Assembly (NCBI GenBank): GCA_002269645.1
Contig: NIVC01001711.1
Location: 62,001 to 126,000 of the forward strand
DNA length: 64,000 nt
DNA from: Macrostomum lignano
Lineage: Eukaryota
Direction of reading: 5' to 3'
Shown here: positions 5,546 to 42,844 of the stretch, piece after piece
Numbering within the stretch: position 1 is the stretch's first letter
Layout: the number at the start of each line of letters is the position of its first letter
Notes under the pieces: model-generated
What the model saw: only the letters and a program-made list of their open reading frames with translations
Database searches by the model: none
What the model was told of the DNA's origin: nothing
Position numbers and translations under genes: made by a program

Positions 5546-8500
5546 TAAGACAGACACACAGTAAGACCGACAGGCTGGCAGACAGACGTACTAACACAGG
5601 CGTACAGGCGCAATGCACACAAAGACCTTGATATTTGCACGAAAAAAGACGCGCAGGTAAGCAGGGACGCATCAATGCTATCCCCATTGTGCCCGCAGAA
5701 CTCACCCAACTACGACCCGGAGCTGGAGAGCTGCGAGTTCTACCATCCCAGCCACAGGGAGGAGCGCGTCGAGGAGCTGAAGAGCCGGCCAACCGGGACC
5801 TACTTCCTTCGGCCGAGCGCCAAGAGCCGCAGCGTGTCCGTGCTCTGCGTCAATTGTAACGACGCTATAAAAAAATTCGAAATCGAGAGAATCCCGGGCG
5901 GCTTCAATCTGTCCGGCAAAGCATTTCGCACTATTGACGAAGTCATCCAGCGCTACTCCGTTAAGTACATCGACGAGAAGAACGAGGTGAAGTTGCGCGA
6001 GCCGCTGCTCAGACGGAGTCACGCCGCATCCAACCTACCGCAGGAGGACATCTACGCTCCCAATCGGGCTTCATCAACTCAGATTCGGGAGTGCCAACTG
6101 GCCGCCGAGTTTCACTGCCTGTTCCCGAAGCGTCGGAGTCGGCAGCGAGCCTGGAAACGGCAGCGCTGCATTCTGCATCGGCGGCAGGACGAGAATCACG
6201 AGGTGCTGATCACGTCCAGCTCGGAGGTTGGCAGGCAGCCGAAGGGCAAGCCAAAAGGCTTGATAGCGTTGGAGTTCGCTCACTTGTACCCTGTGTGCCA
6301 CGGCGCTTATGACAGGCCGCACTGCCTGCAGTTGGTCATCTTCAATGAGGTGTCTGCGAATTCGACACCGCCTGATGTCTACGTGCTGGCGGCCGACTCG
6401 CAGGCTGTGCTGGCCGAGTGGCTGGCCGCTCTCAAGCCGCTGTGCAAGTGCAGCAAGGTGTGCAACCACGGCCAGAGGAGCGGGCACGTCAGGCATGTCA
6501 GCACGCTGGAGGTGAGCTGATTAGGTTTGTCGGATTTCTAGTGTGGGATTTCTAGTGTAGGGTTTCTAGGTTGGTGATTTTTTGTGGGATTTTTAGTGTG
6601 GGTTTTTTAGTGTGGGATTTCTAGTGTGGGATTTCTAGTGTGAGATTTCTAGTGTTAGGTTTCCAGTGGGGATTTTTAGTGTGGGATTTCTAGTGTGGCA
6701 TTTCTAGTGTGGGATTTCTAGTTTTGGATTTCTAGTGTGGCATTTCTAGTGTAGGGTTTCTAGGTTGGTGATTTTTTGTGGGATTTTTAGTGTGGGTTTT
6801 TTAGTGTGGGATTTCTAGTTTGGGATTTCTAGTGTGGGATTTCTAGTGTGGGATTTCTAGTGTGGGATTTCTAGTGTAGGATTTCTAGTTTGGGATTTCT
6901 AGTGTGGGGATTTTCAGTGTGAGCTTGCTGTTTAGGGTCATTATTTAGCTGCATGATGGCTACCTCCCGCCTGCGCCCATCCAGGTGGCCGTCAAAGGCG
7001 TCCGCAATCTCAACGTCAGCTGTAAGACCGCCTTCGTCGCGGTTCACTTTAACGGGGTTGTGGTGGCGAAGACCCGGTCCAACCGGCGGGAGCAGGACGA
7101 TGACAGCGTGCTCAACTGGGACGAGCAATTCCACTTGTGAGTGCTTCTCATTTTACTTCTCTTTGTCTACCTCTGTATCTGCATTTTAATTTGATTTCCT
7201 CTGGCTATCACTTCTCTGAATTTCGCACTCTCAATTCACTCTGTATATCCCTTTTTTATTTACCTTTGTAGTCCACTTCTCTGCTTAGAGTCTGCCTCTT
7301 AATCTACCTCTCAGTCTACTTCTGTCTGGTAATTAGTCTACTTTTCAGTCTACTTCTTCTGATAATTAGTCTACCTATCAGTCTACTTCTCCTTTTTAGT
7401 CTACTTCTTAGTCTACTTTCCTGTCTGGTAATTAGTCTACTTCTCAGTCTACTTTTCTGTCTGGTAATTAGTCTACTTCTCAGTCTGGTAATTAGTCTAC
7501 CTATCAGTCTACTCTGTCTGGTAATTAGTCTACTTCTCAGTCTACTTCTCAGTCTGGTAATTAGTCTACCTATCAGTCTACTCTGTCTGGTAATTAGTCT
7601 ACTTCTCAGTCTACTTCTCAGTCTGGTAATTAGTCTACCTATCAGTCTACTCTGTCTGGTAATTAGTCTACTTCTCAGTCTACTTCTCTGTCTGGTAATT
7701 AGTCTACTTATCAGTCTACTTCTCTGTCTGCTTATACATGTACGTTGGAGTATTTTGCAGAACTTTATGTCACTCTGTGTCCCCAGCAATAAAAGTACAC
7801 CTCGTAGAACTGCCCTAGATAAATGAAATTGTACAGAATTGAGGCCACTCTGCGTGGGAGGCGAGAGGTCACATGGTGCACAGTGTGTATACACAGATTG
7901 AACTGGTAATTCGCCTGATTTCAGCATGAGTCATAGGATAGTGGAATTTTCACCCTAATATGCAAGTATGCCCATTTTTAAGTAGAATTCCAAGCTTTTC
8001 ATTATTAAAAATGTTACAATTATATAGCATTTCGCTTGTTAAACTTATGTTGCATTGAGCAGCCCCTCAAGAAATTTTGATTGTCTTTATGCTATAGTAA
8101 ATTGAGTGTAGTACAGGAATGTACATCTTCCATAGGGTGCAGAGGTGTACATCTGTTCCATAGGATGCAGAAGAGGTGTACATCTGTTCTAAAAGGTGCA
8201 GAAGTGTACATCTGTTCCATAGAGTGCAGAGGTGTACATCTGTTCCATAGAGTGCAGAGATGTACATCTGTTCCATAGGGTGCAGAGGTGTACAAGTGCA
8301 TCTGTTCCATAGGGTGCAGCAGAGGTGTACATCTGTTCCATAGGGTGCAGAGGTGTACAAGTACATCTGTTCCATAGTGTGTAGAGGTGTACAAGTGCAT
8401 CTGTTCCATAGGGTGCAGAGGTGTACAAGTGCATCTGTTCCATAGGGTGCAGCAGAGGTGTACATCTGTTCCATAGGGTGCAGAGGTGTACAAGTGCATC

Positions 8501-16093: not shown

Positions 16094-19000
16094 ATGACTA
16101 AGCTCCACGCTGCCAAAGGAGCGACATTCTGTCTGCAAATAAATTTACAGCATTGCGTATCTGCGTCAGTAAATCTGATGAAGATTGCTGAGCTGTACAG
16201 GCCAGGCCTCATCCTGATCCAGGAACCCTGGATGCGCAACGGTAAGTTGCCCAACATTCCCTCTGGCTACTCTGAATTTTATGTGTGTGGCCCGGGGAAC
16301 AACCGCCCTAGAGCGGCTATCCTCGCTGCTAGCCATCTCCAGGCTTGGCTGAGGACTGATCTCTCTGATGGAGACCTTTGCGTCATCCAATCTAATCATT
16401 TCTCTCCGCGTACGTGTCTTGTTGCCTCGGTTTATATCCCAGGCGACAGAGACCCTGCTCCCGAGAGTTTACTGCGCCTCGCGCAGTACTGCAAGTCCCA
16501 GAACGCTGAGCTGTGCTTAGGGGGTGACCTCAACGCGCACCACAAGCACTGGGGCAGCAAAGATACCAACACTAGAGGAGAGGAGCTTCTGGCCCTCATC
16601 TCTAACACAAACCTCATGCTCTGCAACCGCGGCAGCACTCCTACCTTTAATAATGGCAGATGGACCGAGGTCCTCGACGCCACACTCGTTACCCCAAGAC
16701 TCTTTGACAGAGTTGAGGAGTGGAGAGTCTGGTCTGAGGAGCCCTCCCTGTCTGACCACTGCTTTATCGCCTTTAATATCGCGGACACTAAAACCCAGTC
16801 TCCGATCACTTGGAGGCGCAATATCCGCAACACTGATTGGGCGGCCTACAAGGCTGCCCTTGATCTGCACCTGCAGGAACTCACGGACTTACGTCCGATT
16901 GAGACCTGCGAGGATGTGGATCATATGGCTGAGACGCTGACAGGTTGCATTATTGAAGCCTACGAAGCGGCTTGTCCTGCTCGCGCCTACCAAGGCAAGA
17001 CCTCGGCGCCGTGGTGGAACCCGGAACTGGGGAAACTCAGGCGGAAGGCCAAAAGCCTTCATCGCCGTGCCATGAAGACCGGAAACCCGGAGGACATGGA
17101 GCTTTTCCGGCAAGCCTCCCGCAATTTCAAATCTGAAGTGCGCAAGGCCAAGGAATGTAAGTGGCGCCAATTCTGCAATGAATTGGATCAAGACAGACCT
17201 ACTTCTAGGCTTGTCAAGGCCCTTACAATGGACAAAATGTCCAAATTAGCCATGATCAAAAAAGATGACGGCTCTCTTACTAAAGACCCTGAAGAAGTGC
17301 TTCAGCATATGCTTAGCACATTCTTCCCGAGGGTACCTACTGCTAGACCGGAGCCCAACCATTCGATGGATGGAGCCACCCTAGCGGCGGGCATTGTCAC
17401 TGAAGACCTAATCGCTCGTGCGGTCAGAACCTTCAAACCCTTCAAATCTCCTGGACCTGATGGTATCTACCCTGTTCTCCTTCGTGAAGCAGCCAAGATA
17501 CCCTCGTTCCTGAGACTCACCCGCAATCTTATGCGGGCCTCTATCCAGCTGGGATACGTTCCCAAATGCTGGACTGAAGCTCGGGTAGTCTTTATTCCCA
17601 AACCTGGGAAGGGTGACTACCAAAGCGTCAAGGCCTTCCGGCCTATTAGCTTAACGTCAGCAATGCTTAAGCTCACTGAGAGGCTTATTCTCTGGCGGCT
17701 GCTGTCCTGCGAGCTGACAGCGATGCCCCTCAGCAATAATCAGCACGCCTTCCGTACCGGGAGGTCGACTGACAGCGCCCTGCATGCGATTGTCGAGAAG
17801 ATTGAAAGGGCGGTACTGGGTGACGGTTACGCTCTGGCTCTCTTTCTTGACATTGTTGGCGCCTTCGACAACGTTATCTTTGAAGCGTTTCAGAGGGCCC
17901 TTCAAAATCGCAAAGCTCATGCTACCCTCATACGGTGGATCATGTACATGATCTCCAACCGTACGGTCACTGCCCAACTTCTTGGGCAAACTGCCTCCAC
18001 CAGAGTCTGTAAGGGTGGACCCCAAGGCGGAGTCCTCACCCCGACGCTCTGGAACCTGGTCATGGACGCTCTTCTGAGTGACTCCCGACCCGACCCCGTC
18101 TTCAAAGTCGGGTATGCTGATGACGTCACGGCCATTGTGGCAGGACCGTCTCCCAGCACGCTCAGGGATCTGATGCAGAGCTTTATCTGCAAAGCAGAAA
18201 CCTGGGCCAATGACAATGGTCTGGAACTCTCTGAGCCCAAAACCGTTGCCATTATGTTTACCAGCAGACTACGCTGGAACATACGTCCTCTGCAGCTCTA
18301 CGGCAGAGATATTGCCTTCGCGCACCAGACCAGATGTCTCGGGGTCACACTTGACCACCGGCTTAACTGGTCCTTCCACGTGAAAGCAAAAGCCAAGCGT
18401 GCCTCAGCCATCCTGGCCCAGCTCCGACGAGCACTTGGCACTTCTTGGGGTCTATCCCCAAAGCGGCTTTGGTGGATCTATACTTCCGTAGTTAGACCTG
18501 CCATTACGTACGCCTCTGTTGTCTGGGTTAGCGCTACCCAGGTCAAAAGCCATGCAGACCTGCTCAACAAGATCCAAGGCAGAGCGTGTAGGCTCATCTG
18601 CAACGCCACCAGGTCCACGCCCTTTGCTGGCATGGGGGCCTTCCTTAATCTACCGCCTCTTGACCTCTTCGTCAGGGGTGAGGCGGCTAGAACGACGCGG
18701 CGTCTAATTGATGCCGGCGTCAAATTCATTTACATGAGAGCACCTGCTAAGCGGAACCTTGTCCCGCATAGCGACCTGTGCCTCAACTTTCTCAACGAGT
18801 GTCAGGCCAATCGCGTCTTCACCGATGGCATTGCCTCAACGCTCAACCTGAGACAGCGCTACTCCGTAGCTATCGACTCGCGCGATAACATCAATGACCA
18901 ATGGAACCTTGGTGAGCTTCATTGCTACACCGACGGTTCTAAGCAGTCAGCCAACACCGGCTTTGGTGTTGGAATCTTTCTGAACGGGAGGGTCATCGCT

Positions 19001-19838
19001 ACCCACGCTCAATACACTGGGGTCAACTTCAGTGTTTTCCAAAATGAAGTTCTGGCAATCAGCTCCTGCACTGCAGAGCTTCTCGCCACTGGCGTTATTG
19101 GCAAGAACATCATTTTCCATTCGGACAGCCAAGCTGCCTTGCACGCCATCAGTGGCTGCAGCACCAACTCTGCTACAGTCCTCGACTGTATCAAACTTCT
19201 CAACGTGTTGGGTTCCGCCAACAAAATTACCCTTAAGTGGGTTCCGGGGCATGTGGGGATCCGAGGAAATGAGTTGGCTGACTGACACCCTTGCAAAAGT
19301 TGGTGCCTCCGGCTCCTCTCTCGGCCCCGAACCCCTTGTCCCGATTCCTGGCTGTGTCATCGACTCGCGCATCAAAGCGTGGATCAGGACTCAGCACCGC
19401 TCGACTTGGGCGAACCGCACGAACTGCAGGCAATCCAGAGGCGCTGTCCCTCAGCCCTCTCACCAGCTCCGGAAGCTCCTCTTGCGCCTCTCGCGCAGAG
19501 ACATCCGGGCTGCCACCATGACCCTCTCTGGTCACGGCTGCTTCTCCAGGCACCAGTACCTGCAGGGCAACGCCACCAACGCCACCTGTAGTTTCTGCAA
19601 CTCAGGTGACGAAACTGCTGAGCATTTCGTCAGCATCTGTCCCGCCTTCACGCGGGCCAGACTCACTTACCTCGGGCCACACACATGTATTACTGAAGCG
19701 TGCAAACCCGAAAACTTTAATCAGCTCACGCGCTACCTTCGGGCCACCCGCAGGGCTGAACTCTCCTTTCCAGAGAGCACTATAGCTGCTGGCGACACTG
19801 GGGGACCTCCCTGGGCGGCGCCAACCCTCCGTCCATAG
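16094..19838 (+). pseudogene. LINE ORF2 (endonuclease, reverse transcriptase, RNase H, zinc knuckle) broken by one 4-bp duplication
   Basis: APE motifs IQEPW, GDLNAHH, SDH. RT motifs PGPDG, FRPISL, QHAFR, FLDIVGAFD, PQGG, YADD. RNase H motifs YTDGS, E, SDSQA, NELAD. CSFC-x8-H-x4-C knuckle. TGAC is duplicated at 19279-19286, creating the stop at 19283-19285. Removing it joins the 19287-19838 frame (about 1246 aa). Confidence 0.92.
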
Positions 19839-24900: not shown

Positions 24901-26121
24901 TCACCTGACTGTCAAGTCAGCGTCGCGGTCGACACGGTCGACGTCTTCAGCCTCGTGAACTTCGCATTCGGTTTCAGTAGTCCCGTTATTTGAGGCGGCG
25001 GCGCCAGTCTCGGCAATCATCGCAGCCTCCTGATTGGTCCCGGTGGCCTCGTTGTTGTCCTCCGTCAGGTTGTCATCCTGAATTCCGTCCTCAGGTCCGA
25101 CGTGGCCACCGTTCTGACGCTGGCGGCTCTTGTCGACGGTGGAGTACCGGTAGGACGTGTTCAGCCGCGAGTCACTCCGAGCGGCATTGGGGGGCCGCTT
25201 CGGGAACAAGCAGGGCAGGATGTTGCGGAACTCGTTCTGGAAGTTGGCGTTCATCCAGCCGTACAGGAACGGGTTGTACATCACGGAGCTCATGGCCAGC
25301 AGGTGGCACACGAAGAAGAGGCTGCGGAACAGGCCCTCCGAGGTTATGCCGACATCGTTCAGCATCCACAGCAGGTTCAGCGGGATCCAGCACACCACGA
25401 AGATGACCACCATGGCGATGAGCATCCGGTTGGTGCGCCGCTTCCTGCGGATGTCCAGCTCCTCCTTGCTGCGCGACTTCTTGGCCAGAGTTTTCTTGTG
25501 GCGATTCTTCAAGCTGATGCTCACCTTGGAGTAGCAGGCCGTGATGATGGAGCAAGGAATGAGGAACTGCAGCACGAAGCTGATCACGGTGAAGACTGGC
25601 CGGTATTCGGGCTTCCAGTCCTCCACGCAGCTCTCCGTTGCCGCCTCGTCCGAGGACTTCACGCGCTGGAACACGGCGATGGGCAGGCTGATGAGCACGG
25701 CCACCAGCCAGATGATCACCACGATGAGCAGGCAGAGGCCCGTCTTCATCCGGGGCACGAACGGGTGCACAATCATGCAGTAGCGTTCAACGGCGATGGC
25801 CGTTGAAGTCAGGGTCGACACGTACACGGAGACGCCCATGGTCATCGGCATGAGCTTGCAAACTGCGCCCGGCAGCGTCCAGGTCTGCATGAACATCACC
25901 GTCGGCGTCAGCGGCACGTTCACCGTGCTCATGATGACGTCAGAGATGGCCAGGTTGGTGATGAGGATGTTGGTGATGGTCTGCATGCTGCGCTTCCTCA
26001 GTACAACTGTGATCACCAGCAGGTTGCCCAGGGTGCCGAGCATGCAGATGATGGAGTAGAACAGGACGCACAGCGACTTCACCCACATCGGGTGGGTGGG
26101 GATGGTCGCGTTGTGGCTCAT
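24901..26121 (-). CDS. class A neuropeptide GPCR, NPY/NPF-PrRP/sNPF receptor family, 406 aa, intronless CDS
   Basis: Seven hydrophobic segments. Motifs GN (TM1), NLAISD (TM2), C in ECL1, AVERY (TM3), W and P in TM4, QFLIP (TM5), CWIPLN (TM6), MSSVMYNPFLYGWMNANF (TM7). The ATG at 26121 gives N-terminal MSHNAT with an NAT glycosylation sequon. Confidence 0.93.
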   Translation of the reverse strand: MSHNATIPTHPMWVKSLCVLFYSIICMLGTLGNLLVITVVLRKRSMQTITNILITNLAISDVIMSTVNVPLTPTVMFMQTWTLPGAVCKLMPMTMGVSVYVSTLTSTAIAVERYCMIVHPFVPRMKTGLCLLIVVIIWLVAVLISLPIAVFQRVKSSDEAATESCVEDWKPEYRPVFTVISFVLQFLIPCSIITACYSKVSISLKNRHKKTLAKKSRSKEELDIRRKRRTNRMLIAMVVIFVVCWIPLNLLWMLNDVGITSEGLFRSLFFVCHLLAMSSVMYNPFLYGWMNANFQNEFRNILPCLFPKRPPNAARSDSRLNTSYRYSTVDKSRQRQNGGHVGPEDGIQDDNLTEDNNEATGTNQEAAMIAETGAAASNNGTTETECEVHEAEDVDRVDRDADLTVR

Positions 26122-26367
26122 TGCAGGCGGGCGACTCGGTCTGGGTTTAATGGAATGGGTGGCTACGCGTGTATACAGACAGCACTCAGCAACGGTTGAG
26201 GCTGACCCCTCCTGACTCGGACAGACATTATCAGTCAGAAGACGCGGGGTCACGAGCACGCAAAAGTGGCGCCCGTGGTGGTGGCATCAGGGAGGCGCAG
26301 CCAGGTACTTTCCAATGTGTACATGCAACCCGGAGTTCGATTCCTGCTCGCGCGGTCACATTACTGT

Positions 26368-29111: not shown

Positions 29112-29959
<848 letters not shown>

Positions 29960-30524
29960 CCCCAAGCCCTTAAAAACGAAGAGCTCGAAATCCGACAGCG
30001 CCTCGTGCATCTCTTTGATCCTTCGCGAAGAAAATGCTTACAGGATGAGATTAAAAACAGGGTGATTAAAGGCCGCTCTTCATTTAGCCCTCGAAAACAG
30101 CTTTTGCCTCATCACATCACCTCCAGCCTGTCCGGAGCCGGGGGGGGGGTTCGCGTGATGGGGATCTACAGATAGAGTCGCCATTAGCCTGGGATTAGCA
30201 CGCCACTTCCCTCTCTCCTCGCCCTCCTTCCTCAGTGATTCGATCTGCATGAAAATGGATATTAAATTTTTATTCATCTGGGCCATCACGAGATGGATTA
30301 AATAAGCTTTTAATCTGCCTAAAGAGCCTTCGAAAAAAGCAGTGGCTCTCCGTTGTCCGTTCAAGACTAAGAGTTGGGTAGCTGAGGCAGCTGAGAAAAC
30401 AGGATAAAATAGAATCGGATTTAGTTGCATTTAAAAAGATTTTTCTGGTTTTTGAAGGCCTCAAATTTCGATTTAAATGTGGCTTGGAAAATTACATATT
30501 TACCTGCCAGGTTTCGAGGGCACT

Positions 30525-32945
30525 CAGATCCCGCACTGTCTCACTCAGATCCCGCACTGTCTCACTCAGATCCCAAACTGTCTCACTCAGATCCCAAACT
30601 GTCTCACTCAGATCCTACACTGTCTCACTCAGATCCCACACTGTCTCACTCAGATCCCACACTGTCTCACTCAGATCCCACACTGTCTCACTCAGATCCC
30701 ACACTGTCTCACTCAGATCCCACACTGTCTCACTCAGATCCCAAACTGTCTCACTCAGATCCCACACTGTCTCACTCAGATCCCACACTGTCTAACTCAG
30801 ATCCCACACTGTCTCACTCAGATCCCACACTGTCTCACTCAGATCCCAAACTGTCTCACTCAGATCCCACACTGTCTCACTCAGATCCCGCACTGTCACT
30901 CAGATCCCACACTGTCTCACTCAGATCCCACACTGTCTCACTCAGATCCCACACTGTCTCACTCAGATCTCACACTGTCTCTCTCAGATCTCACACTGTC
31001 TCACTCAGATCTCACACTGTCTCTCTCAGATCTCACACTGTCTCACTCAGATCTCACACTGTCTCACTCAGATCCCGCACTGTCACTCAGATCCCACACT
31101 ATCACTCAGATCCCACACTGTCTCACTCAGATCCCACACTGTCTCACTCAGATCCCACACTGTCACTCAGATCCCACACTGTCACTCAGATCCCACACTG
31201 TCACTCAGATCCCACACTGTCACTCAGATCTCATACTGTCACTCAGATCCCACAGTGTCACTCAGATCCAATACTGTCACTCAAATCCCACACTGTCTCA
31301 CTCAGATCCCACACTGTCTCACTCAGATCCCAAACTGTCTCACTCAGATCCCACACTGTCTCACTCAGATCCCACACTGTCTAACTCAGATCCCACACTG
31401 TCTCACTCAGATCCCACACTGTCTCACTCAGATCCCAAACTGTCTCACTCAGATCCCACACTGTCTCACTCAGATCCCGCACTGTCACTCAGATCCCACA
31501 CTGTCTCACTCAGATCCCACACTGTCTCACTCAGATCCCACACTGTCTCACTCAGATCTCACACTGTCTCTCTCAGATCTCACACTGTCTCACTCAGATC
31601 TCACACTGTCTCTCTCAGATCTCACACTGTCTCACTCAGATCTCACACTGTCTCACTCAGATCCCGCACTGTCACTCAGATCCCACACTATCACTCAGAT
31701 CCCACACTGTCTCACTCAGATCCCACACTGTCTCACTCAGATCCCACACTGTCACTCAGATCCCACACTGTCACTCAGATCCCACACTGTCACTCAGATC
31801 CCACACTGTCACTCAGATCCCACACTGTCACTCAGATCCCACACTGTCACTCAGATCCCACACTGTCTCACTCAGATCCCACACTGTCTCACTCAGATCC
31901 CACACTGTCACTCAGATCCCACACTGTCACTCAGATCCCACACTGTCACTCAGATCCCACACTGTCACTCAGATCTCATACTGTCACTCAGATCCCACAG
32001 TGTCACTCAGATCCCACACTGTCACTCAGATCCCACACTGTCACTCAGATCCCACACTGTCACTCAGATCCCACACTGTCTCACTCAGATCCCACACTGT
32101 CACTCAGATCCCACACTGTCACTCAGATCCCACACTGTCACTCAGATCCCACACTGTCACTCAGATCTCATACGGTCACTCAGATCCCACAGTGTCACTC
32201 AGATCCCACACTGTCACTCAGATCCCACACTGTCACTCAGATCCCACACTGTCACTCAGATCTCATACTGTCACTCAGATCCCACAGTGTCACTCAGATC
32301 CAATACTGTCACTCAAATCCCACAGTGTCTCACTCAGATCTCACACTGTCTCACTCAGATCCCACACTGTCTCACTCAGATCTCACACTGTCTCACTCAG
32401 ATCTCACACTGTCTCACTCAGATCTCACACTGTCTCTCTCAGATCTCACACTGTCTCACTCAGATCTCACACTGTCTCACTCAGATCCCACACTGTCTCA
32501 CTCAGATCCCACACTGTCTCACTCAGATCCCACACTGTCTCACTCAGATCCCACACTGTCTCACTCAGATTCCACACTGTCACTCAGATCCCATACTGTC
32601 ACTCAGATCCCACACTGTCTCACTCAGATCCCACACTGTCTCACTCAGATCCCGCACTGTCACTCAGATCCCACACTATCACTCAGATCCCACACTGTCT
32701 CACTCAGATCCCACACTGTCTCACTCAGATCCCACACTGTCACTCAGATCCCACACTGTCTCACTCAGATCTCACACTGTCTCACTCAGATCCCACACTG
32801 TCTCACTCAGATTCCACACTGTCTCACTCAGATCCCACACTGTCTCACTCAGATCCCACACTGTCTCACTCAGATCCCACACTGTCACTCAGATCCCATA
32901 CTGTCACTCAGATCCCACACTGTCTCACTCAGATCCCACACTGTC
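30525..32945. repeat. 21/19-bp minisatellite with 589-bp internal duplication
   Basis: Units CACTCAGATCCCACACTGTCT and CACTCAGATCCCACACTGT. Variants TCTAAC (30791, 31380) and ACTATC (31098, 31687) recur 589 bp apart. Confidence 0.95.
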
Positions 32946-33283: not shown

Positions 33284-33289
33284 TTTATT
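33284..33289 (-). terminator. candidate poly(A) signal of the FAD enzyme gene
   Basis: AATAAA on the minus strand about 105 nt after the stop. Confidence 0.4.
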
Positions 33290-33394: not shown

Positions 33395-36300
33395 TCAGAT
33401 CTCTTTCAACCGATTCTCCAGCTCAGGAAAGGCCTTCAGCAGCAGCATTTTGTTATACTTCATGACGCTTTTCACCGAGTCAAACGACACGGAATGACCT
33501 GTGAACCAGGTGCGCCTGAAGCCCTGCACTTGGTCAAGGATTCGCCACAGAACCCCATCGGCAATTTCCGGTATGGTGTATCGAGGCATGTAGTTGAAGG
33601 TTATTGAGGCCAGGGTGTCGCCGCTAGCCAGCGGGTCGTGAGCTTCCGGTGCTGTCTGCAGGTCGCTGCTTGAGCCTTCCGCATTGGAGTAGCCTGACAG
33701 GTAGTAGGCTACGATGGTGGAGGAGGCTGGAGTCTCCGGGCTTCGATTGAAATCTGGCGAGTTCAGAGCCAGTTCGGAGTTGCGAATGGCCAGGAGGCGA
33801 TCGAGACTGGGGCTGCGGATTTCCGTGCGGGGGTTGATATTAGGAGGGTGCAGACTGTGAGTGGAGGGTGTAGACTGTGAGTGGAGGGTGCAGACTGTGA
33901 GTGGAGGGTGCAGACTGTGAGTGGAGGGTGCAGACTGTGAGTGGAGGGTGCAGACTGTGAGTGGAGGGTGCAGACTGTGAGTGGAGGGTGCAGACTGTGA
34001 GTGGAGGGTGCAGACTGTGAGTGGAGGGTGTAGAAAGTGAGTGGAGGGTGTAGACTGTGAGTGGAGGGTGTAGAATGTGAGTGGAGGGTTTTGATTGAAC
34101 CTAGATTCTCTGGCTTCTATAGAGAAAAGAAGAGCTGTCAACAATTGTGAATGGAGACGAGGCTAGAGAGAGATGGAGCTACTGCATGCAGATAATGAAT
34201 TTCCATCACATACTTCTCCATGTCCAGCTGGTCCAGGTAGTAGGCCACAGGGTAGGCCGCCACTTCCGGTTGACCGGAAAAGCGCACCAGCTTAGTCAGA
34301 AACTTTCTGGACTTCAGTCTGGAGAACACGTCCTTCTCAGCCGGGGTCAGGTCATCCAACAGGCCGCCCGTGACCGCCTGCGCGCTGGGAGTCCACACCA
34401 GCCAGTCCGCCGTCTCCATGCTGTTGTCAAGGAGTCGAATCTTGATGGGACGGCCGCCGCCGCCACCGCTCCTGCTGACACCAACGACACGACTGTTCAT
34501 GCGGAACTGCACACCGCCAGCCAGCTGGAGACGGTCGCGCGCCGACTCCCAGAAAGTCTGGGTGGATCGAATTCAATGATAACGATATGAAATGAGAGCT
34601 AAGATGGCCAGCTTACACTTTGGTGCTTTGGAGTGGGGTAGGAATTGAAGATAAGATCTCCAATGTACAGTCTAGCTTTGTTAGAATTGGAGTAGGGTAG
34701 GAATTGAAGATAAGATCTCCAATGTACAGTCTAGCCTTGGTGGCATTGGAGTGGGGTAGGAATTAAAGATAAGATCGCTAATGTACAGTCTAGCTTTGGT
34801 AGAATTGGAGTGGGGCAGGAATTGAAGATAAGATCTCCAATGTACAGTCTAGCTTTGGTGGCATTGGAGTGGGGTAGGAACTGAAGATAAGATCTCCAAT
34901 GTACAGTCTAGTTTTGGTAGAATTGGAGTGGGGCAGGAATTGAAGATAAGATCTCCAATGTACAGTCTAGCTTTAGCAGAATTGGAGAGGGGTAGGAATA
35001 GAAGATAAGATCTCCAATGTACAGTCTAGCTTTGGTAGAATTGGAGTGGGGTAGGAATAGAAGATAAGATCGCCAATTTACAGTCTATATAGCTTTGGTG
35101 GCATTGGAGTGGGGTAGGAATTGAAGATAAGATCGCCAATGTACAGTCTAGCTTTGGTAGAATTGGAGTGGGGTAGGAATTGAAGATAAGATCACCAATG
35201 TACAGTCTAGCTTTGGTGGCATTGGAGTGGGGTAGGAATTGAAGATAAGATCGCCAATGTACAGTCTAGCTTTGGTAGAATTGGAGTGGGGCAGGAATTG
35301 AAGATAAGATCGCCAATGTACAGTCTAGCTTTGGTGGTAATAGAGTGGGGGAGGAATCGAAATGGGTTGAAGATGGCAAGTAGAGCAATCTGTAATCACC
35401 TAATACAGAGCACAAGAATGGTCGGGCGCACCTGGAATCCCTTGCGCAACATGCCGAGCCTGGACTCCTTCCGGGGCACCAGCAGGTCAGTCAGGTAGGC
35501 CTCCGACATCCACATGAGTCCGTAGAGAGCGGACGTGTCGCTGGGGCTGCCGTAGCCCATGGCGGTCATGCCGAACAGAAAGTAGGGCTCCAGAGCCAGC
35601 AAGCCGTTCTTCTCCAGATAGCTGAGCGCGCTGCAGTTCAACTCGGCCAGCGCCTCGCTTGACGGCTCGGCCAGCGGGAACTCCAGGAAGTCCGGCTGCT
35701 GGGCCGGATAGAGCTTTGAGCGCAGGCGGATGTAGCGCTGACTGGCCTGCAGAATGTGCTGCTTGACCTCCTCATCGGATGCGTTGGGCGGCAGCGTTGG
35801 ATCCAGGCGTCGAACCCTGCCGAACACGAACTGCTCAAGGTCCATCTAGAAGTTGGAAAAGTTTCTTTCCTAACTTACGGATTTGCCACTTACTAGAGTA
35901 CACGCTCACACAGGGTGAATAGGGGCGCCAGCACCAGGAGCTTTAGCACCAGGGGCTTTAGCACCAGGGGCTTTAGCACCAAGGGGCTTTAGCACCAGGG
36001 GCGCCAGCACCAGGGGCGCCAGCACCAGGGGCTTTAGCACCAAGGGGCGCCAGCACCAGGGGCGCCAGCACCAGGGGCGCCAGCACCAGGGGCTTTAGCA
36101 CCAAGGGGCTTTAGCACCAGGGGCTTTAGCACCAAGGGGCTTTAGCACCAGGGGCGCCAGCACCAGGGGCGCCAGCACCAAGGGTGCCATCACCTGGGGC
36201 GCCAGCACCAGAAAAACTTGTGAACCAGCGCAGGATCAGAACAGCGCAAAATTCAGTGCTACTGAAAACTCGCAAGTTTCGAGTTCAGCTGACAGCTCAT

Positions 36301-36692
36301 ACCTGGCGAGCGGATGGCTCAGACGATTCTCTGATCACCGCGGCAGGCAGGGTGGCTTCATCCAGATCGTAGCCGATGCCCTGAGCCATGCGGCGCAGGT
36401 CTCGGTAGTCGCTGCTCACGTAGCAGGTGCCCAACTCGTGCGGCAGCGGGTCCGCCTCCGAGACCTTCAGCGTGACGGAGCGCCCGCCGACCCGGCCGGA
36501 GGACTCCAGCACAAGGAGATTCTTGAAGCCCAGACTGCGGAGCAGGTAGGCCATATGCATCCCGGCTGGGCCGGCGCCCACAATGGCCACCCTCGAAGAC
36601 CGGCTGGGCCGCTCGGCAGCTGTCGGCAGGCAGGCGGCGTCATGGTTGCTAAGCAACTGCAGCAGCAACAGCAGCAGCAGTGATGATCTCAT
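33395..36692 (-). CDS. secreted FAD-dependent oxidoreductase, polyunsaturated fatty acid isomerase (PAI/PFI)-like, 521 aa
   Basis: Exons 36692-36303, 35845-35432, 34557-34214, 33812-33395 (1566 nt; phases 0, 0, 2; donors GTATGA, GTGCGC, GTATGT). Signal peptide MRSSLLLLLLLQLLSNHDAA. Rossmann motif RVAIVGAGPAG...VLESSGRVGGRS...HELG. Central TAMGYG. C-terminal YMPR...QGFRRTWFTGHSVSF. The FAD-enzyme call is firm; the isomerase-family call is from recalled similarity. Confidence 0.85.
33843..34090. repeat. 20-bp intronic minisatellite
   Basis: Unit GTGAGTGGAGGGTGCAGACT. Confidence 0.92.
34600..35345. repeat. 59-bp intronic minisatellite
   Basis: Unit GAATTGGAGTGGGGTAGGAATTGAAGATAAGATCTCCAATGTACAGTCTAGCTTTGGTA. 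Confidence 0.92.
35915..36210. repeat. 15-bp intronic minisatellite
   Basis: AGCACCAGGGGCGCC and AGCACCAGGGGCTTT variants. Confidence 0.92.
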
Positions 36693-42000: not shown

Positions 42001-42726
42001 TTACAGAAGCTCATCAACATCATTGCTTTCAGAGTGAATATCATTAATAGAAGAAACTGTCCCAGCTTCCTTCTCCATCTCAGCCTGCTCAGTGCAGTCA
42101 TTCTGCAGCTCTTCCTCTTCCTTCACCGCCAGCTCATTCTCCAGGTCGGCGTCAACGCCAGCCAGCGGAGGCGGCGGCGGAGCCGGAGTGACGGCGGCGG
42201 CCCCAGCCTCATCTTCATCCGCTGCGTCATCGATTCCTCTCTCAACATCGTCGTCAGCATCGTCAGCAGCGGCGGCAGCGACATCCGCTTCGCTGCCGTT
42301 CTGACGCTCAGCAACATCCACTTCCTCCAGCTTCGGCAGTTTCACGTCCAAAGACGAGTCCTCCTCATCGACATCGTCAACATCGTCGGTGTTATTGACG
42401 CTGTCATCGGCTCCTCGTTTCAACGACTGCGGCGGCGACTTCAAGCTGGCCGGCTGACGGGGCGGCAGCAGCTGGGAGCGCCGGATCTGCGCCTTGATCT
42501 GGTGCACAGATTTTGTGCGCAGAGTCTCGGCAATGCGGGCCAAGTCGGTGTGGCCGTGCCGGGCCACGCAGTCGCGCAGCATCTGCAGCTCGGCGCTGGT
42601 CCACTTCAGCCGGCCGCTGCTGTCCTCGGCGGTCTGCAGGGCCAGCGTCGTCTGCTCGGCAAGGCGGCTGAATGCGGCACCGGCGAACAGAAACAGCTCG
42701 GAGACTGCGGCCGCGCCGGAGGTCAT
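42001..42726 (-). CDS. BAP18: BAP18 / BACC1 (C17orf49) homolog, SANT/Myb-like chromatin complex subunit, 241 aa
   Basis: N-terminus MTSGAAAVSELFLFAGAAFSRLAEQT...KWTSAELQMLRDCVARHG..DLARIAETLRTKSVHQIKAQIRR matches recalled human BAP18 MTSASTKVGEIFSAAGAAFTKLGELT...KWTETEIEMLRAAVKRFGDDLNHIS...KERTVAQIKATVKR. Single uninterrupted ORF ending TAA. Confidence 0.88.
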   Translation of the reverse strand: MTSGAAAVSELFLFAGAAFSRLAEQTTLALQTAEDSSGRLKWTSAELQMLRDCVARHGHTDLARIAETLRTKSVHQIKAQIRRSQLLPPRQPASLKSPPQSLKRGADDSVNNTDDVDDVDEEDSSLDVKLPKLEEVDVAERQNGSEADVAAAAADDADDDVERGIDDAADEDEAGAAAVTPAPPPPPLAGVDADLENELAVKEEEELQNDCTEQAEMEKEAGTVSSINDIHSESNDVDELL

Positions 42727-42844
42727 GATGGCGGATGACGGGGCTTGATGGAGCAAACAGGGGGATGCTGGGCACTAACTGGATCAGCTGCCGCTGAAAC
42801 AGGCGGGTTCAGGATGGACAGTAAGAATGAATACTTGCTATGCT

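What the first reader, a model, noticed from the sequence alone, without database searches (positions are those of the whole stretch)
33395..36692. Secreted, intron-containing homolog of polyunsaturated fatty acid isomerase (PAI) in an animal genome
Seen in sequence: a clean 4-exon, 521-aa ORF with a signal peptide and FAD Rossmann fold. Recalled knowledge: it follows Cutibacterium (Propionibacterium) acnes linoleate isomerase along its whole length, not just the GxGxxG motif. Matches are SRVAIVGAGPAG vs SRIAIIGAGPAG, SYLEKNG...TAMGYG vs EFLALNG...TAFGYG, KGFQTFWE vs DGTQAMFE, and YMPR...QGFRRTWFTGHSVSF vs YFPH...QGRRNTFYAGEIMSF. The characterised members I know are bacterial (PAI) and red-algal (PFI, also with a leader) and make conjugated fatty acids. 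I know of no characterised animal enzyme of this type. Spliceosomal introns and host-style intronic minisatellites show it is a resident gene, not contamination. Inference: it could be a secreted gut or mucus enzyme that conjugates dietary PUFA (digestive, antimicrobial or oxylipin-like role), acquired by HGT or retained patchily. The residue matching the PAI TAFGYG Phe is Met, so substrate or chemistry may differ.
Basis: partly seen in the sequence, partly recalled or inferred. Interest (0 to 1): 0.78.

Follow-up and report, generated by a model that had tools for sequence, protein, structure and literature searches.

The report
Flatworm secreted PAI/PFI-like fatty-acid isomerase gene
A flatworm (Macrostomum lignano) gene with three introns encodes a probably secreted flavoprotein of the small enzyme family that turns polyunsaturated fatty acids into conjugated ones; relatives occur in corals, jellyfish, scallops and a copepod, and I found no report of an animal member being tested.

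Summary
On the minus strand at 33395-36692 there is a 4-exon, GT-AG spliced, 521-aa gene. The same exon boundaries on the Mlig_3_7 assembly reproduce the GenBank protein BOX15_Mlig024262g1 of Macrostomum lignano exactly. That copy is 98% identical, and dN/dS between the two copies is 0.20.

The protein has a hydrophobic N-terminal leader, a GAGPAG FAD-binding fold, and PAI-type similarity along its whole length:
- A family profile hits PAI (PDB 2b9w) at E 1.5e-44, against 1e-11 (N-terminus only) for any amine oxidase.
- hhalign gives 99.9% probability over 407 columns.
- The AlphaFold model matches 2b9w best (TM 0.84 against 0.65 or less).

Neighbouring genes (GPCR, SH2/PH, LINE) and the repeat content show a resident animal gene.

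- The family is not unique to this animal. Secreted-type homologues exist in octocoral, hydrozoan, scyphozoan, scallops (RefSeq already names some "polyenoic fatty acid isomerase-like") and a copepod, and also in protists, fungi, a red alga and bacteria.
- The PAI residues recalled as substrate-binding are not conserved: R88 aligns with Ala (uncertain alignment), F168 with Met, F193 with Leu.

Isomerase activity, substrate and origin (HGT or patchy retention) remain untested. This is a new member of a known kind, of moderate interest.

The parts
36303..36692 (-). Coding exon 1 (aa 1-130): start ATG, signal-peptide-like leader, FAD Rossmann beta-alpha-beta
   Evidence: ORF and donor CAG|GTATGA; boundaries reproduce P0001 on L007
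36630..36692 (-). N-terminal hydrophobic leader MRSSLLLLLLLQLLSNHDAAC (predicted signal peptide)
   Evidence: Translation. The best 10-residue Kyte-Doolittle mean is 3.07. Similar leaders occur across the animal clade and are absent in bacterial members. PAI aligns only from residue 30 on.
36561..36578 (-). GAGPAG dinucleotide-binding motif (aa 39-44)
   Evidence: Translation. G39, G41 and G44 are invariant in the 40-sequence family alignment. Pfam NAD_binding_8 and Amino_oxidase hits.
35846..36302 (-). Intron 1 (phase 0, GT..AG), 64% occupied by a 15-bp minisatellite (35921-36211)
35432..35845 (-). Coding exon 2 (aa 131-268): helical substrate-domain part with the family signature TAMGYG..ALYGL
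35549..35566 (-). TAMGYG motif (aa 224-229); Met226 sits at the position of PAI Phe168
   Evidence: Y228 and G229 are invariant or nearly so in the family. Residue mapping.
34558..35431 (-). Intron 2 (phase 0), 84% occupied by a 59-bp minisatellite (34628-35361)
34214..34557 (-). Coding exon 3 (aa 269-383, ends in phase 2)
   Evidence: Acceptor cccag|ACTTTC and donor GAGAA|GTATGT. The region aligns to homologues, which argues against the shorter 491-aa UniRef model P0002.
33813..34213 (-). Intron 3, 62% occupied by a 20-bp minisatellite (33843-34089)
33395..33812 (-). Coding exon 4 (aa 383-521 plus stop): C-terminal FAD-domain part with YMPR..QGFRRTWFTGHSVSF
   Evidence: The acceptor cgcag|CC at 33812 gives 521 aa, which equals the annotated model. 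Q479, G480 and G488 are invariant in the family. This part aligns to PAI residues 339-423.
33284..33289 (-). AATAAA, candidate polyadenylation signal about 105 nt after the stop codon
   Evidence: Read directly from the sequence; not tested

Best explanation
This is a functional nuclear gene of the flatworm Macrostomum lignano. It encodes a secretory-pathway, FAD-binding enzyme of the PAI/PFI family (the Cutibacterium acnes polyunsaturated fatty acid isomerase and the red-algal polyenoic fatty acid isomerase).

Proposed mechanism, step by step:
1. Inferred from sequence: the N-terminal leader sends the protein into the ER and out of the cell or into a lumen. There is no KDEL-type C-terminal ER-retention signal, and three N-x-S/T sequons are present.
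2. Motifs shown, binding inferred: FAD is held by the GAGPAG/E63/GG Rossmann unit and the C-terminal QG...G488 segment.
3. Inferred by homology to PAI and PFI: a free long-chain PUFA enters a hydrophobic channel formed by the two non-Rossmann domains. A bis-allylic hydrogen is passed to the flavin and returned at a shifted carbon. Methylene-interrupted cis double bonds thereby become a conjugated diene or triene, with no net redox change and no H2O2.

The worm eats diatoms, so EPA or arachidonate are plausible substrates. This is inference from general knowledge that diatoms are EPA-rich. The channel-mouth residues differ from those of PAI, so chain length, regiochemistry and the need for a free carboxylate may differ.
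For: The gene is real and constrained:
- The exon model equals GenBank BOX15_Mlig024262g1 on the second copy.
- The exons have no indels and dN/dS is 0.20 (15 synonymous, 9 non-synonymous changes; binomial p 1e-4). The introns are 6-12% divergent with many indels.
- The Mlig_3_7 annotation was built from RNA-seq-guided transcript assembly (PMC5730564).

Family assignment:
- Profile against PDB: PAI at 1.5e-44 over the whole chain, all others 1e-11 or weaker and N-terminal only.
- hhalign: 99.9% probability, E 1.5e-32, 407 columns.
- Foldseek: 2b9w at E 7e-28 with TM 0.84, against TM 0.68 or lower for the amine oxidases (model pLDDT 80, pTM 0.85).
- Scallop 'PFI-like' and red-algal members also hit PAI best.

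Chemistry of the two characterised members:
- PAI is an FAD-dependent, non-redox isomerase working through an ionic mechanism (PMC13076199).
- PFI makes conjugated trienes from EPA and arachidonate (PMC7700177).
- Both are isomerases. PAI splits off at the base of my PAI-rooted tree. If PFI lies within the eukaryote-rich clade, as the RefSeq names suggest, the two would bracket the flatworm protein.

Secretion and diet:
- A hydrophobic leader is shared by the animal clade.
- M. lignano is cultured on the diatom Nitzschia curvilineata (PMC5730564, PMC7053086).
Against: - No activity, cofactor or expression data exist for this protein or for any animal homologue.
- Identity to PAI is only 21%.
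- The PAI residues I recall as carboxylate clamp and channel lining are not conserved: R88 aligns with Ala in a poorly aligned loop, F168 with Met226, F193 with Leu251.
- Only two members have been characterised, out of about 390 clusters at 50% identity with E <= 1e-10. Functional diversity within the family is therefore unknown.
- I could not align the Ptilota PFI sequence itself. The PFI link rests on RefSeq product names.
- The signal peptide was not scored with a dedicated predictor.
Confidence: 0.5

Rival explanations
1. The fold is the same but the chemistry differs. The protein would be a secreted flavin oxidase or dehydrogenase that generates H2O2, like the secreted L-amino-acid oxidases of molluscs, fish and snakes. 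It would act on an amine, an amino acid or a lipid, with a defensive role.
For: - Pfam Amino_oxidase is hit above its threshold (45 bits against a cut-off of 19.8).
- The protein belongs to the MAO/LAAO/PAO superfamily by fold.
- Secreted LAAO-type enzymes are common animal defence proteins (general knowledge).
- The recalled PAI substrate residues are not conserved.
Against: - Similarity to every solved amine or amino-acid oxidase is confined to the first 70-110 residues. PAI aligns end to end.
- TM-score is 0.84 to PAI and 0.68 or lower to the amine oxidases listed in the Foldseek output.
- The Pfam match covers only profile positions 2-260 of 443.
Confidence: 0.2
2. A PAI-like non-redox flavoenzyme that acts on a different lipid. 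Candidates are esterified or amide-linked PUFA, an oxylipin, a carotenoid or another polyene. The product would not be a conjugated free fatty acid.
For: - The Arg that clamps the carboxylate in PAI (recalled) is Ala, Pro or Ser in the animal clade, while 19 of 81 other members keep Arg.
- The family is large and diverse.
- Some protist members carry MG... N-termini that suggest membrane anchoring.
Against: - The loop around R88 aligns poorly, and an Arg (R120) lies three residues further on.
- Both characterised members use free PUFA.
Confidence: 0.2
3. Origin rival. The gene entered the Macrostomum lineage by horizontal transfer from a microbial eukaryote or a bacterium and gained its introns afterwards. 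The alternative is an old metazoan gene that most phyla have lost.
For: - No other flatworm appeared among the named hits, and the next-best hits are only 32-34% identical.
- The flatworm protein sits on a long branch whose position has 1-45% bootstrap support.
- A chytrid protein is as similar (31.6%) as the best animal protein (31.8%).
- The octocoral-type copy (L001) and an unidentified eukaryotic copy (L003) are intronless.
- Met at the TAxGYG position is shared with actinobacterial members.
Against: - The best named hit is an octocoral protein (3e-65). The NJ tree places the flatworm protein next to the clade of cnidarians, scallops and copepod.
- Like those animal proteins, and unlike the bacterial ones, it has a secretory leader.
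- It is far from the bacterial groups: 85 bits to an actinobacterial HMM and 36 bits to a PAI HMM, against 200-310 bits to the eukaryote-rich groups.
- It has three spliceosomal introns and host-type repeats.
Confidence: 0.25
4. Artefact: a contaminating microbial sequence, or a decaying pseudogene.
For: None beyond the microbial affinities of the wider family.
Against: - The gene lies between a rhodopsin-type GPCR, an SH2+PH gene, a LINE element and a Myb gene.
- The Myb gene lies upstream of the homologous gene in an independent M. lignano assembly too.
- It has GT-AG introns filled with the same kind of minisatellites that cover 46% of the window.
- The reading frame is intact in both copies, with dN/dS 0.20.
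Confidence: 0.01

Closest known systems
PAI, polyunsaturated fatty acid (linoleate) isomerase of Cutibacterium (Propionibacterium) acnes, PDB 2B9W/2BAB
   Same: - Three-domain FAD fold, collinear along the whole chain (hhalign 99.9%, 407 columns; Foldseek TM 0.84).
- Shared signatures: GAGPAG, RxGG, TAxGYG, AxY, QGxRxT(W/F)xxG..SF.
   Different: - 21% identity.
- About 100 residues longer, with inserts at about 130-190 and 395-445.
- Has a signal-peptide-like leader, whereas PAI is cytosolic (PMC2885616).
- R88, F168 and F193 are replaced by Ala(?), Met and Leu.
- Eukaryotic, with three introns.
- In the NJ tree PAI is separated from all other members by a 100% bootstrap split.
[quoted passage not shown]
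   Same: - Eukaryotic.
- As I recall from Zheng et al. 2002, PFI carries a leader peptide and is a flavin-containing glycoprotein.
- Scallop proteins that RefSeq names 'polyenoic fatty acid isomerase-like' are 27-29% identical to the flatworm protein over the full length.
- A red-algal (Gracilaria) homologue is 26% identical.
   Different: - I could not retrieve the PFI sequence, so there is no direct alignment.
- The red-algal member falls in a different part of the NJ tree from the animal sequences.
Uncharacterised secreted 'PFI-like' proteins of marine invertebrates: Dendronephthya gigantea, Clytia hemisphaerica, Sanderia malayensis, Pectinidae (multi-copy), Neocalanus flemingeri
   Same: - Closest named relatives (Dendronephthya 31.8% identity, E 3e-65).
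- Same length class (about 490-570 aa).
- N-terminal hydrophobic leader.
- Same conserved motifs.
   Different: - The flatworm protein is on a long branch and lacks the 30-residue segment these proteins carry between leader and Rossmann fold.
- It has TAMGYG where they have TxQGYG.
- The octocoral-type genomic copy is intronless, whereas this gene has three introns.
Flavin amine oxidases (MAO, polyamine oxidase, L-amino-acid oxidase; Pfam PF01593) and prenylcysteine oxidase
   Same: FAD-binding domain and the overall two-layer architecture; a Pfam PF01593 hit.
   Different: - The substrate domain is not detectably similar in sequence.
- Alignments stop after about residue 110.
- The structural match is clearly poorer.

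Membership tests
PAI/PFI-type FAD-dependent PUFA double-bond isomerases | N-terminal FAD dinucleotide-binding fold (GxGxxG, acidic residue at the end of strand 2, RxGG) | tested here: met
   GAGPAG (aa 39-44), E63 and R67-x-G69-G70 are present. G39, G41, G44 and G70 are invariant in 40 family members.
PAI/PFI-type FAD-dependent PUFA double-bond isomerases | Sequence homology to PAI beyond the Rossmann part, covering domains 2 and 3 | tested here: met
   Three collinear HMMER stretches cover PAI residues 5-75, 121-282 and 339-422 (156 bits). hhalign aligns PAI 4-423 at E 1.5e-32. With the single sequence alone the signal is weak (5.7e-7).
PAI/PFI-type FAD-dependent PUFA double-bond isomerases | Three-domain PAI fold | tested here: met
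   The AlphaFold2 model (pLDDT 80.4, pTM 0.85) matches 2b9w first, at E 7.2e-28 and TM 0.84 normalised to PAI. The next hit is at 4e-20 and TM 0.65.
PAI/PFI-type FAD-dependent PUFA double-bond isomerases | Family signature motifs T-A-x-G-Y-G, A-x-Y-x-L and Q-G-x-R-x-T-(W/F)-x-x-G-x-x-x-S-F | tested here: met
   TAMGYG, ALYGL and QGFRRTWFTGHSVSF are present. Y228, Y238, Q479 and G480 are invariant in both family alignments, including 40 diverse members; G229 and G488 are invariant among the 11 closest relatives and nearly invariant in the 40.
PAI/PFI-type FAD-dependent PUFA double-bond isomerases | PAI substrate-channel residues (Arg88 and Phe193 at the carboxylate entrance, Phe168 near the flavin). 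Their roles are recalled from Liavonchanka et al. 2006, which was not readable here. | tested here: not met
   R88 aligns with Ala in a poorly aligned loop, with R120 three residues downstream. F168 aligns with Met226; the family majority there is Gln (87 of 137). F193 aligns with Leu251. These residues are not conserved across the family, so they define PAI's specificity and not family membership.
PAI/PFI-type FAD-dependent PUFA double-bond isomerases | Catalysis: conversion of methylene-interrupted PUFA into conjugated dienes or trienes without net redox; bound FAD | not testable with these tools
   Needs recombinant protein and UV or GC-MS assays.
PAI/PFI-type FAD-dependent PUFA double-bond isomerases | Direct similarity to the Ptilota filicina PFI sequence | not tested
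There is only an indirect link through the RefSeq 'polyenoic fatty acid isomerase-like' names of scallop homologues and through a red-algal homologue.
Flavin amine oxidases (MAO/PAO/LAAO, PF01593) and prenylcysteine oxidase | Pfam PF01593 match above the gathering score | tested here: met
   45.4 bits against a cut-off of 19.8, but only profile positions 2-260 of 443 are matched. PAI itself is deposited as 'putative aminooxidase'.
Flavin amine oxidases (MAO/PAO/LAAO, PF01593) and prenylcysteine oxidase | Homology of the substrate-binding domain to characterised amine, amino-acid or prenylcysteine oxidases | tested here: not met
   All such PDB hits align only to query residues of about 20-135. 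Their Foldseek TM-scores are 0.56-0.68, against 0.84 for PAI.

The most novel reading that the evidence does not exclude
Several marine invertebrate lineages (cnidarians, scallops, copepods and this flatworm) may share an uncharacterised family of secreted flavoenzymes. These would convert dietary algal PUFA (EPA, arachidonate) into conjugated polyene fatty acids. That would be an animal route to bioactive lipids (antimicrobial, signalling or digestive) independent of lipoxygenases and cyclo-oxygenases. In Macrostomum it can be tested genetically.
Probability: 0.35. Interest if true: 0.7.

Novelty: new member of a known kind. Interest (0 to 1): 0.45.

Why it matters
To my knowledge, enzymatic formation of conjugated fatty acids by this family has been shown only for one bacterial enzyme (PAI) and one red-algal enzyme (PFI). 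I found no study of an animal member.

If the flatworm protein and its cnidarian, scallop and copepod relatives are active isomerases, animals that graze on PUFA-rich algae would have their own secreted machinery for making conjugated dienes or trienes. That bears on marine lipid ecology, on oxylipin-like signalling and defence, and on biocatalysts for conjugated PUFA production.

Macrostomum lignano has transgenesis, a defined diatom diet (PMC5730564, PMC7053086) and, to my knowledge, RNAi. It would therefore be a practical system for a first in vivo test.

The finding is less striking than first proposed, because databases already label scallop homologues 'PFI-like'.

Tried and rejected
1. 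Alternative gene models.
- An acceptor at 33854 would give 535 aa. I rejected it because it inserts 14 residues absent from all homologues and from the GenBank model.
- The 491-aa UniRef model (P0002) drops 30 residues that align to homologues and form predicted strands. I rejected it as well.

2. The single-sequence PDB search barely separated PAI (5.7e-7) from L-amino-acid oxidases (8e-6), so a family profile was needed.

I used the 98%-identical P0001 instead.

4. Phylogeny.
- An NJ tree with 100 bootstraps resolves the PAI split (100%). It does not resolve the flatworm's position (1-45%).
- Scoring the protein against clade-specific HMMs did not discriminate animal from protist groups either.
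- No ML tree software was available.

5. The two primary PAI papers (PMC1413795, PMC2658094) are not held. The roles of R88, F168 and F193 therefore come from memory.

6. I could not retrieve the Ptilota PFI sequence.

7. Searches for Mlig024262 found nothing, neither in full texts nor in the supplements of PMC5730564. Searches for animal PFI-like enzymes also found nothing.

8. The Fusarium 'FgLAI12' paper (PMC5384231) does not state the protein family, so I did not use it.

9. tblastn found no second copy of the gene in the window.
Full report
**1. What is in the sequence**

The finding's coordinates are exactly the start and stop of a minus-strand gene. Reading the DNA and the ORF list gives four coding exons:
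- 36692-36303, from the ATG to CAG|GTATGA
- 35845-35432, from ctag|ATGGAC to CAG|GTGCGC
- 34557-34214, from cccag|ACTTTC to GAGAA|GTATGT, ending in phase 2
- 33812-33395, from cgcag|CC to the TGA stop

All three introns are GT...AG, and the spliced product is 521 aa. Another in-frame acceptor at 33854 would give 535 aa. I rejected it because the extra 14 residues have no counterpart in homologues or in the deposited model.

An AATAAA lies about 105 nt after the stop. tblastn finds only this one copy in the window.

**2. Whose gene it is**

A protein search returned a 521-aa GenBank protein, 'hypothetical protein BOX15_Mlig024262g1 [Macrostomum lignano]', at 98% identity (P0001). Its locus is L007, on GCA_002269645.1 contig NIVC01001511.1 of the Mlig_3_7 assembly. 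It aligns with the window over the gene and flanks. My exon boundaries projected onto L007 give P0001 exactly.

That annotation was made from RNA-seq-guided transcript assemblies (PMC5730564). The junctions therefore have indirect transcript support.

The two copies compare as follows:
- Exons: 24 substitutions in 1566 nt and no indels, 15 synonymous and 9 non-synonymous. dS is 0.039, dN is 0.0077 and dN/dS is 0.20. The binomial p for so few replacements is 1e-4.
- Introns: 6-12% mismatches and hundreds of gap columns.

[quoted passage not shown] Its DV1 assembly is also redundant. This explains the second copy. Both copies look selectively maintained.

**3. Resident gene, not contamination**

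The window also holds:
- an intact LINE-type ORF (endonuclease, reverse transcriptase and RNase H; 16094-19285)
- a single-exon rhodopsin-family GPCR (24901-26259, minus strand)
- an SH2+PH ORF (5675-6520)
- a Myb-like ORF (42001-42756, minus strand)

The Myb gene is also upstream of the gene in L007.

Thirty-eight tandem-repeat arrays cover 46% of the window. The three introns are 64%, 84% and 62% minisatellite, with 15-, 59- and 20-bp units. This fits a genome described as unusually rich in simple and tandem repeats.

**4. What the protein is**

- *Pfam.* Only generic matches: Amino_oxidase at 9e-12, covering 260 of 443 profile positions, and NAD_binding_8. NCBIfam gives nothing above its cut-offs.
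- *Single sequence against PDB.* The best hit is 2b9w, the P. acnes fatty acid isomerase PAI, deposited as 'putative aminooxidase'. It matches in three collinear pieces, but only at 5.7e-7, against 8e-6 for L-amino-acid oxidases.
- *Family profile against PDB.* A profile of the protein with ten relatives settles the question. PAI scores 1.5e-44 (156 bits) over residues 5-75, 121-282 and 339-422. The next structure, a spermine oxidase, scores 1.2e-11 on the Rossmann part alone.
- *Profile-sequence alignment (hhalign).* I recovered a 424-aa Cutibacterium orthologue whose matched 162-residue stretch is 95% identical to PAI. hhalign against it gives probability 99.9%, E 1.5e-32, 407 aligned columns and 21% identity.
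- *Structure.* An AlphaFold2 model (mean pLDDT 80.4, pTM 0.85) matches 2b9w first, at E 7.2e-28 and TM 0.84. All amine oxidases follow at 4e-20 or weaker, with TM 0.56-0.68.

That criterion is not met.

**5. The wider family**

An exhaustive phmmer search with P0001 against 1.84 billion cluster representatives finds 1278 proteins at E <= 1e-3, 390 at <= 1e-10 and 52 at <= 1e-30. Named members include:
- Scallops: Argopecten, Pecten, Mizuhopecten and Ylistrum, with several paralogues each. Some are already called 'polyenoic fatty acid isomerase-like' by RefSeq.
- Cnidarians: the octocoral Dendronephthya, the hydrozoan Clytia and the scyphozoan Sanderia.
- The copepod Neocalanus (transcriptome only).
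- Other eukaryotes: a chytrid (Terramyces), oomycetes (Aphanomyces), Arcella, a foraminifer, a chlorarachniophyte and the red alga Gracilaria.
- Bacteria: actinobacteria (Mycobacterium simiae) and a proteobacterial MAG.

The unnamed best metagenomic hits (P0003, P0004 and others) are 70-75% identical to the Dendronephthya protein, so they are octocoral.

Both a scallop 'PFI-like' protein and the Gracilaria protein hit PAI as their best solved structure (4.5e-15 and 1.9e-17). PAI and the eukaryotic PFI-like proteins are therefore one family.

**6. Position of the flatworm protein**

Its best named match is Dendronephthya (31.8% identity, 3e-65). After that come:
- Terramyces: 31.6%
- scallops: 27-29%
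- Gracilaria: 26%
- M. simiae: 23%
- PAI: 21%

In an NJ tree of 81 sequences (468 columns), PAI is separated from everything else with 100% bootstrap support. The flatworm protein falls beside the clade of cnidarians, scallops and copepod. The nodes that place it there have only 1-45% support. Clade-specific HMMs did not discriminate between groups either.

One shared character does link it to the animal clade. Animal members have a hydrophobic N-terminal leader (best 10-residue hydropathy 2.2-3.5). Bacterial members start directly at the Rossmann fold, and several protist members begin with MG..., which is myristoylation-like.

I conclude that a recent bacterial origin is unlikely. Old metazoan inheritance with many losses, or transfer from a microbial eukaryote, cannot be told apart with these tools. 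No other flatworm appeared among the named hits.

**7. Likely mechanism**

*Shown:*
- the leader
- the FAD motifs: GAGPAG, E63, RVGG, and QG...G488 (G488 is invariant among the 11 closest relatives and nearly invariant in the 40-sequence alignment)
- the family signatures TAMGYG and ALYGL
- the PAI-type three-domain fold

*Inferred:* secretion. There is no KDEL-type C-terminal ER-retention signal, and there are three N-x-S/T sequons.

*Inferred by homology:* the chemistry. PAI uses FAD in a non-redox, ionic double-bond migration of linoleate (PMC13076199). PFI turns EPA and arachidonate into conjugated trienes (PMC7700177). PAI lies at the base of the family in my PAI-rooted tree. If PFI sits in the eukaryote-rich clade, the two would bracket the flatworm protein.

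The worm is fed diatoms, which I know to be rich in EPA. A secreted enzyme that conjugates dietary PUFA is therefore a reasonable reading.

*Against over-confidence:*
- The PAI residues I recall as substrate contacts are not kept. R88 aligns with Ala in an unreliable loop, with R120 three residues further on. F168 aligns with Met226. F193 aligns with Leu251.
- At the F168 position most of the family has Gln.
- Only two members of a large family have been assayed.

I put the isomerase reading at about 0.5. An oxidase-type chemistry and a different lipid substrate each get about 0.2. Artefact gets about 0.01.

**8. Novelty and verdict**

The gene is a genuine new member of the PAI/PFI family in a flatworm. 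It is currently annotated only as a hypothetical or amine-oxidase-domain protein.

Animal homologues already exist in public databases, and some are machine-named PFI-like. No paper in the searchable library discusses an animal member.

This is a 'new member of a known kind', of moderate interest. The interest comes mainly from two points. The family looks like a secreted enzyme class shared by several PUFA-eating marine invertebrates. Macrostomum also offers the genetics to test it.

Noticed in passing
window 30521-32945 (also 29112-29959): A 21-bp minisatellite with 120 copies lies immediately downstream of the gene. It creates spurious ORFs of up to 853 aa in several frames ('TQIPHCL...' repeats). 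Next to it is an (AGAT)212 microsatellite.
   Followed up: partly
window 1-64000: 38 separate tandem-repeat arrays (units of 3-263 bp) cover about 46% of the window. This is far above the 15% genome-wide figure quoted for simple and tandem repeats in Mlig_3_7 (PMC5730564).
   Followed up: partly
window 16094-19285 (+): An uninterrupted 1063-aa ORF of a non-LTR (LINE-type) retrotransposon, with endonuclease, reverse transcriptase and RNase H domains. It may be a recently active element.
   Followed up: no
window 24901-26259 (-): A single-exon 452-aa rhodopsin-family GPCR ORF (7tm_1, E 4.6e-56).
   Followed up: no
window 5675-6520 (+) and 42001-42756 (-): An ORF with SH2 and PH domains, and a Myb-like DNA-binding ORF. 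The Myb gene also lies upstream of the homologous gene in the Mlig_3_7 contig (L007 350-1069).
   Followed up: partly
L001 5001-6593 and L003 10001-11806: The octocoral-type homologue (P0003) and an unidentified eukaryotic homologue on a 781-kb metagenomic contig (P0016) are single-exon genes, whereas the flatworm gene has three introns.
   Followed up: no
proteins P0038, P0020, P0028, P0210, P0050 (protist-type family members): Several non-animal eukaryotic members start with MGxxxS/C. This looks like an N-myristoylation or palmitoylation signal in place of a signal peptide, and suggests a membrane-anchored cytosolic subfamily.
   Followed up: no
L005 1545-2912 and 2936-4474: In a Bacillota MAG, a PAI homologue (63% identical to PAI over the matched 162-residue stretch) is followed 24 bp downstream by a second 512-aa ORF that begins with a GxGxxG-type dinucleotide-binding motif (IIIGGALAGLA). 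I did not scan it against any family library. The pair may be an operon.
   Followed up: no
L006 (Colwellia marinimaniae contig of 246 bp): A 246-bp contig in a Colwellia assembly encodes a fragment 100% identical to PAI residues of Cutibacterium. It is probably skin-bacterium contamination of that assembly.
   Followed up: no
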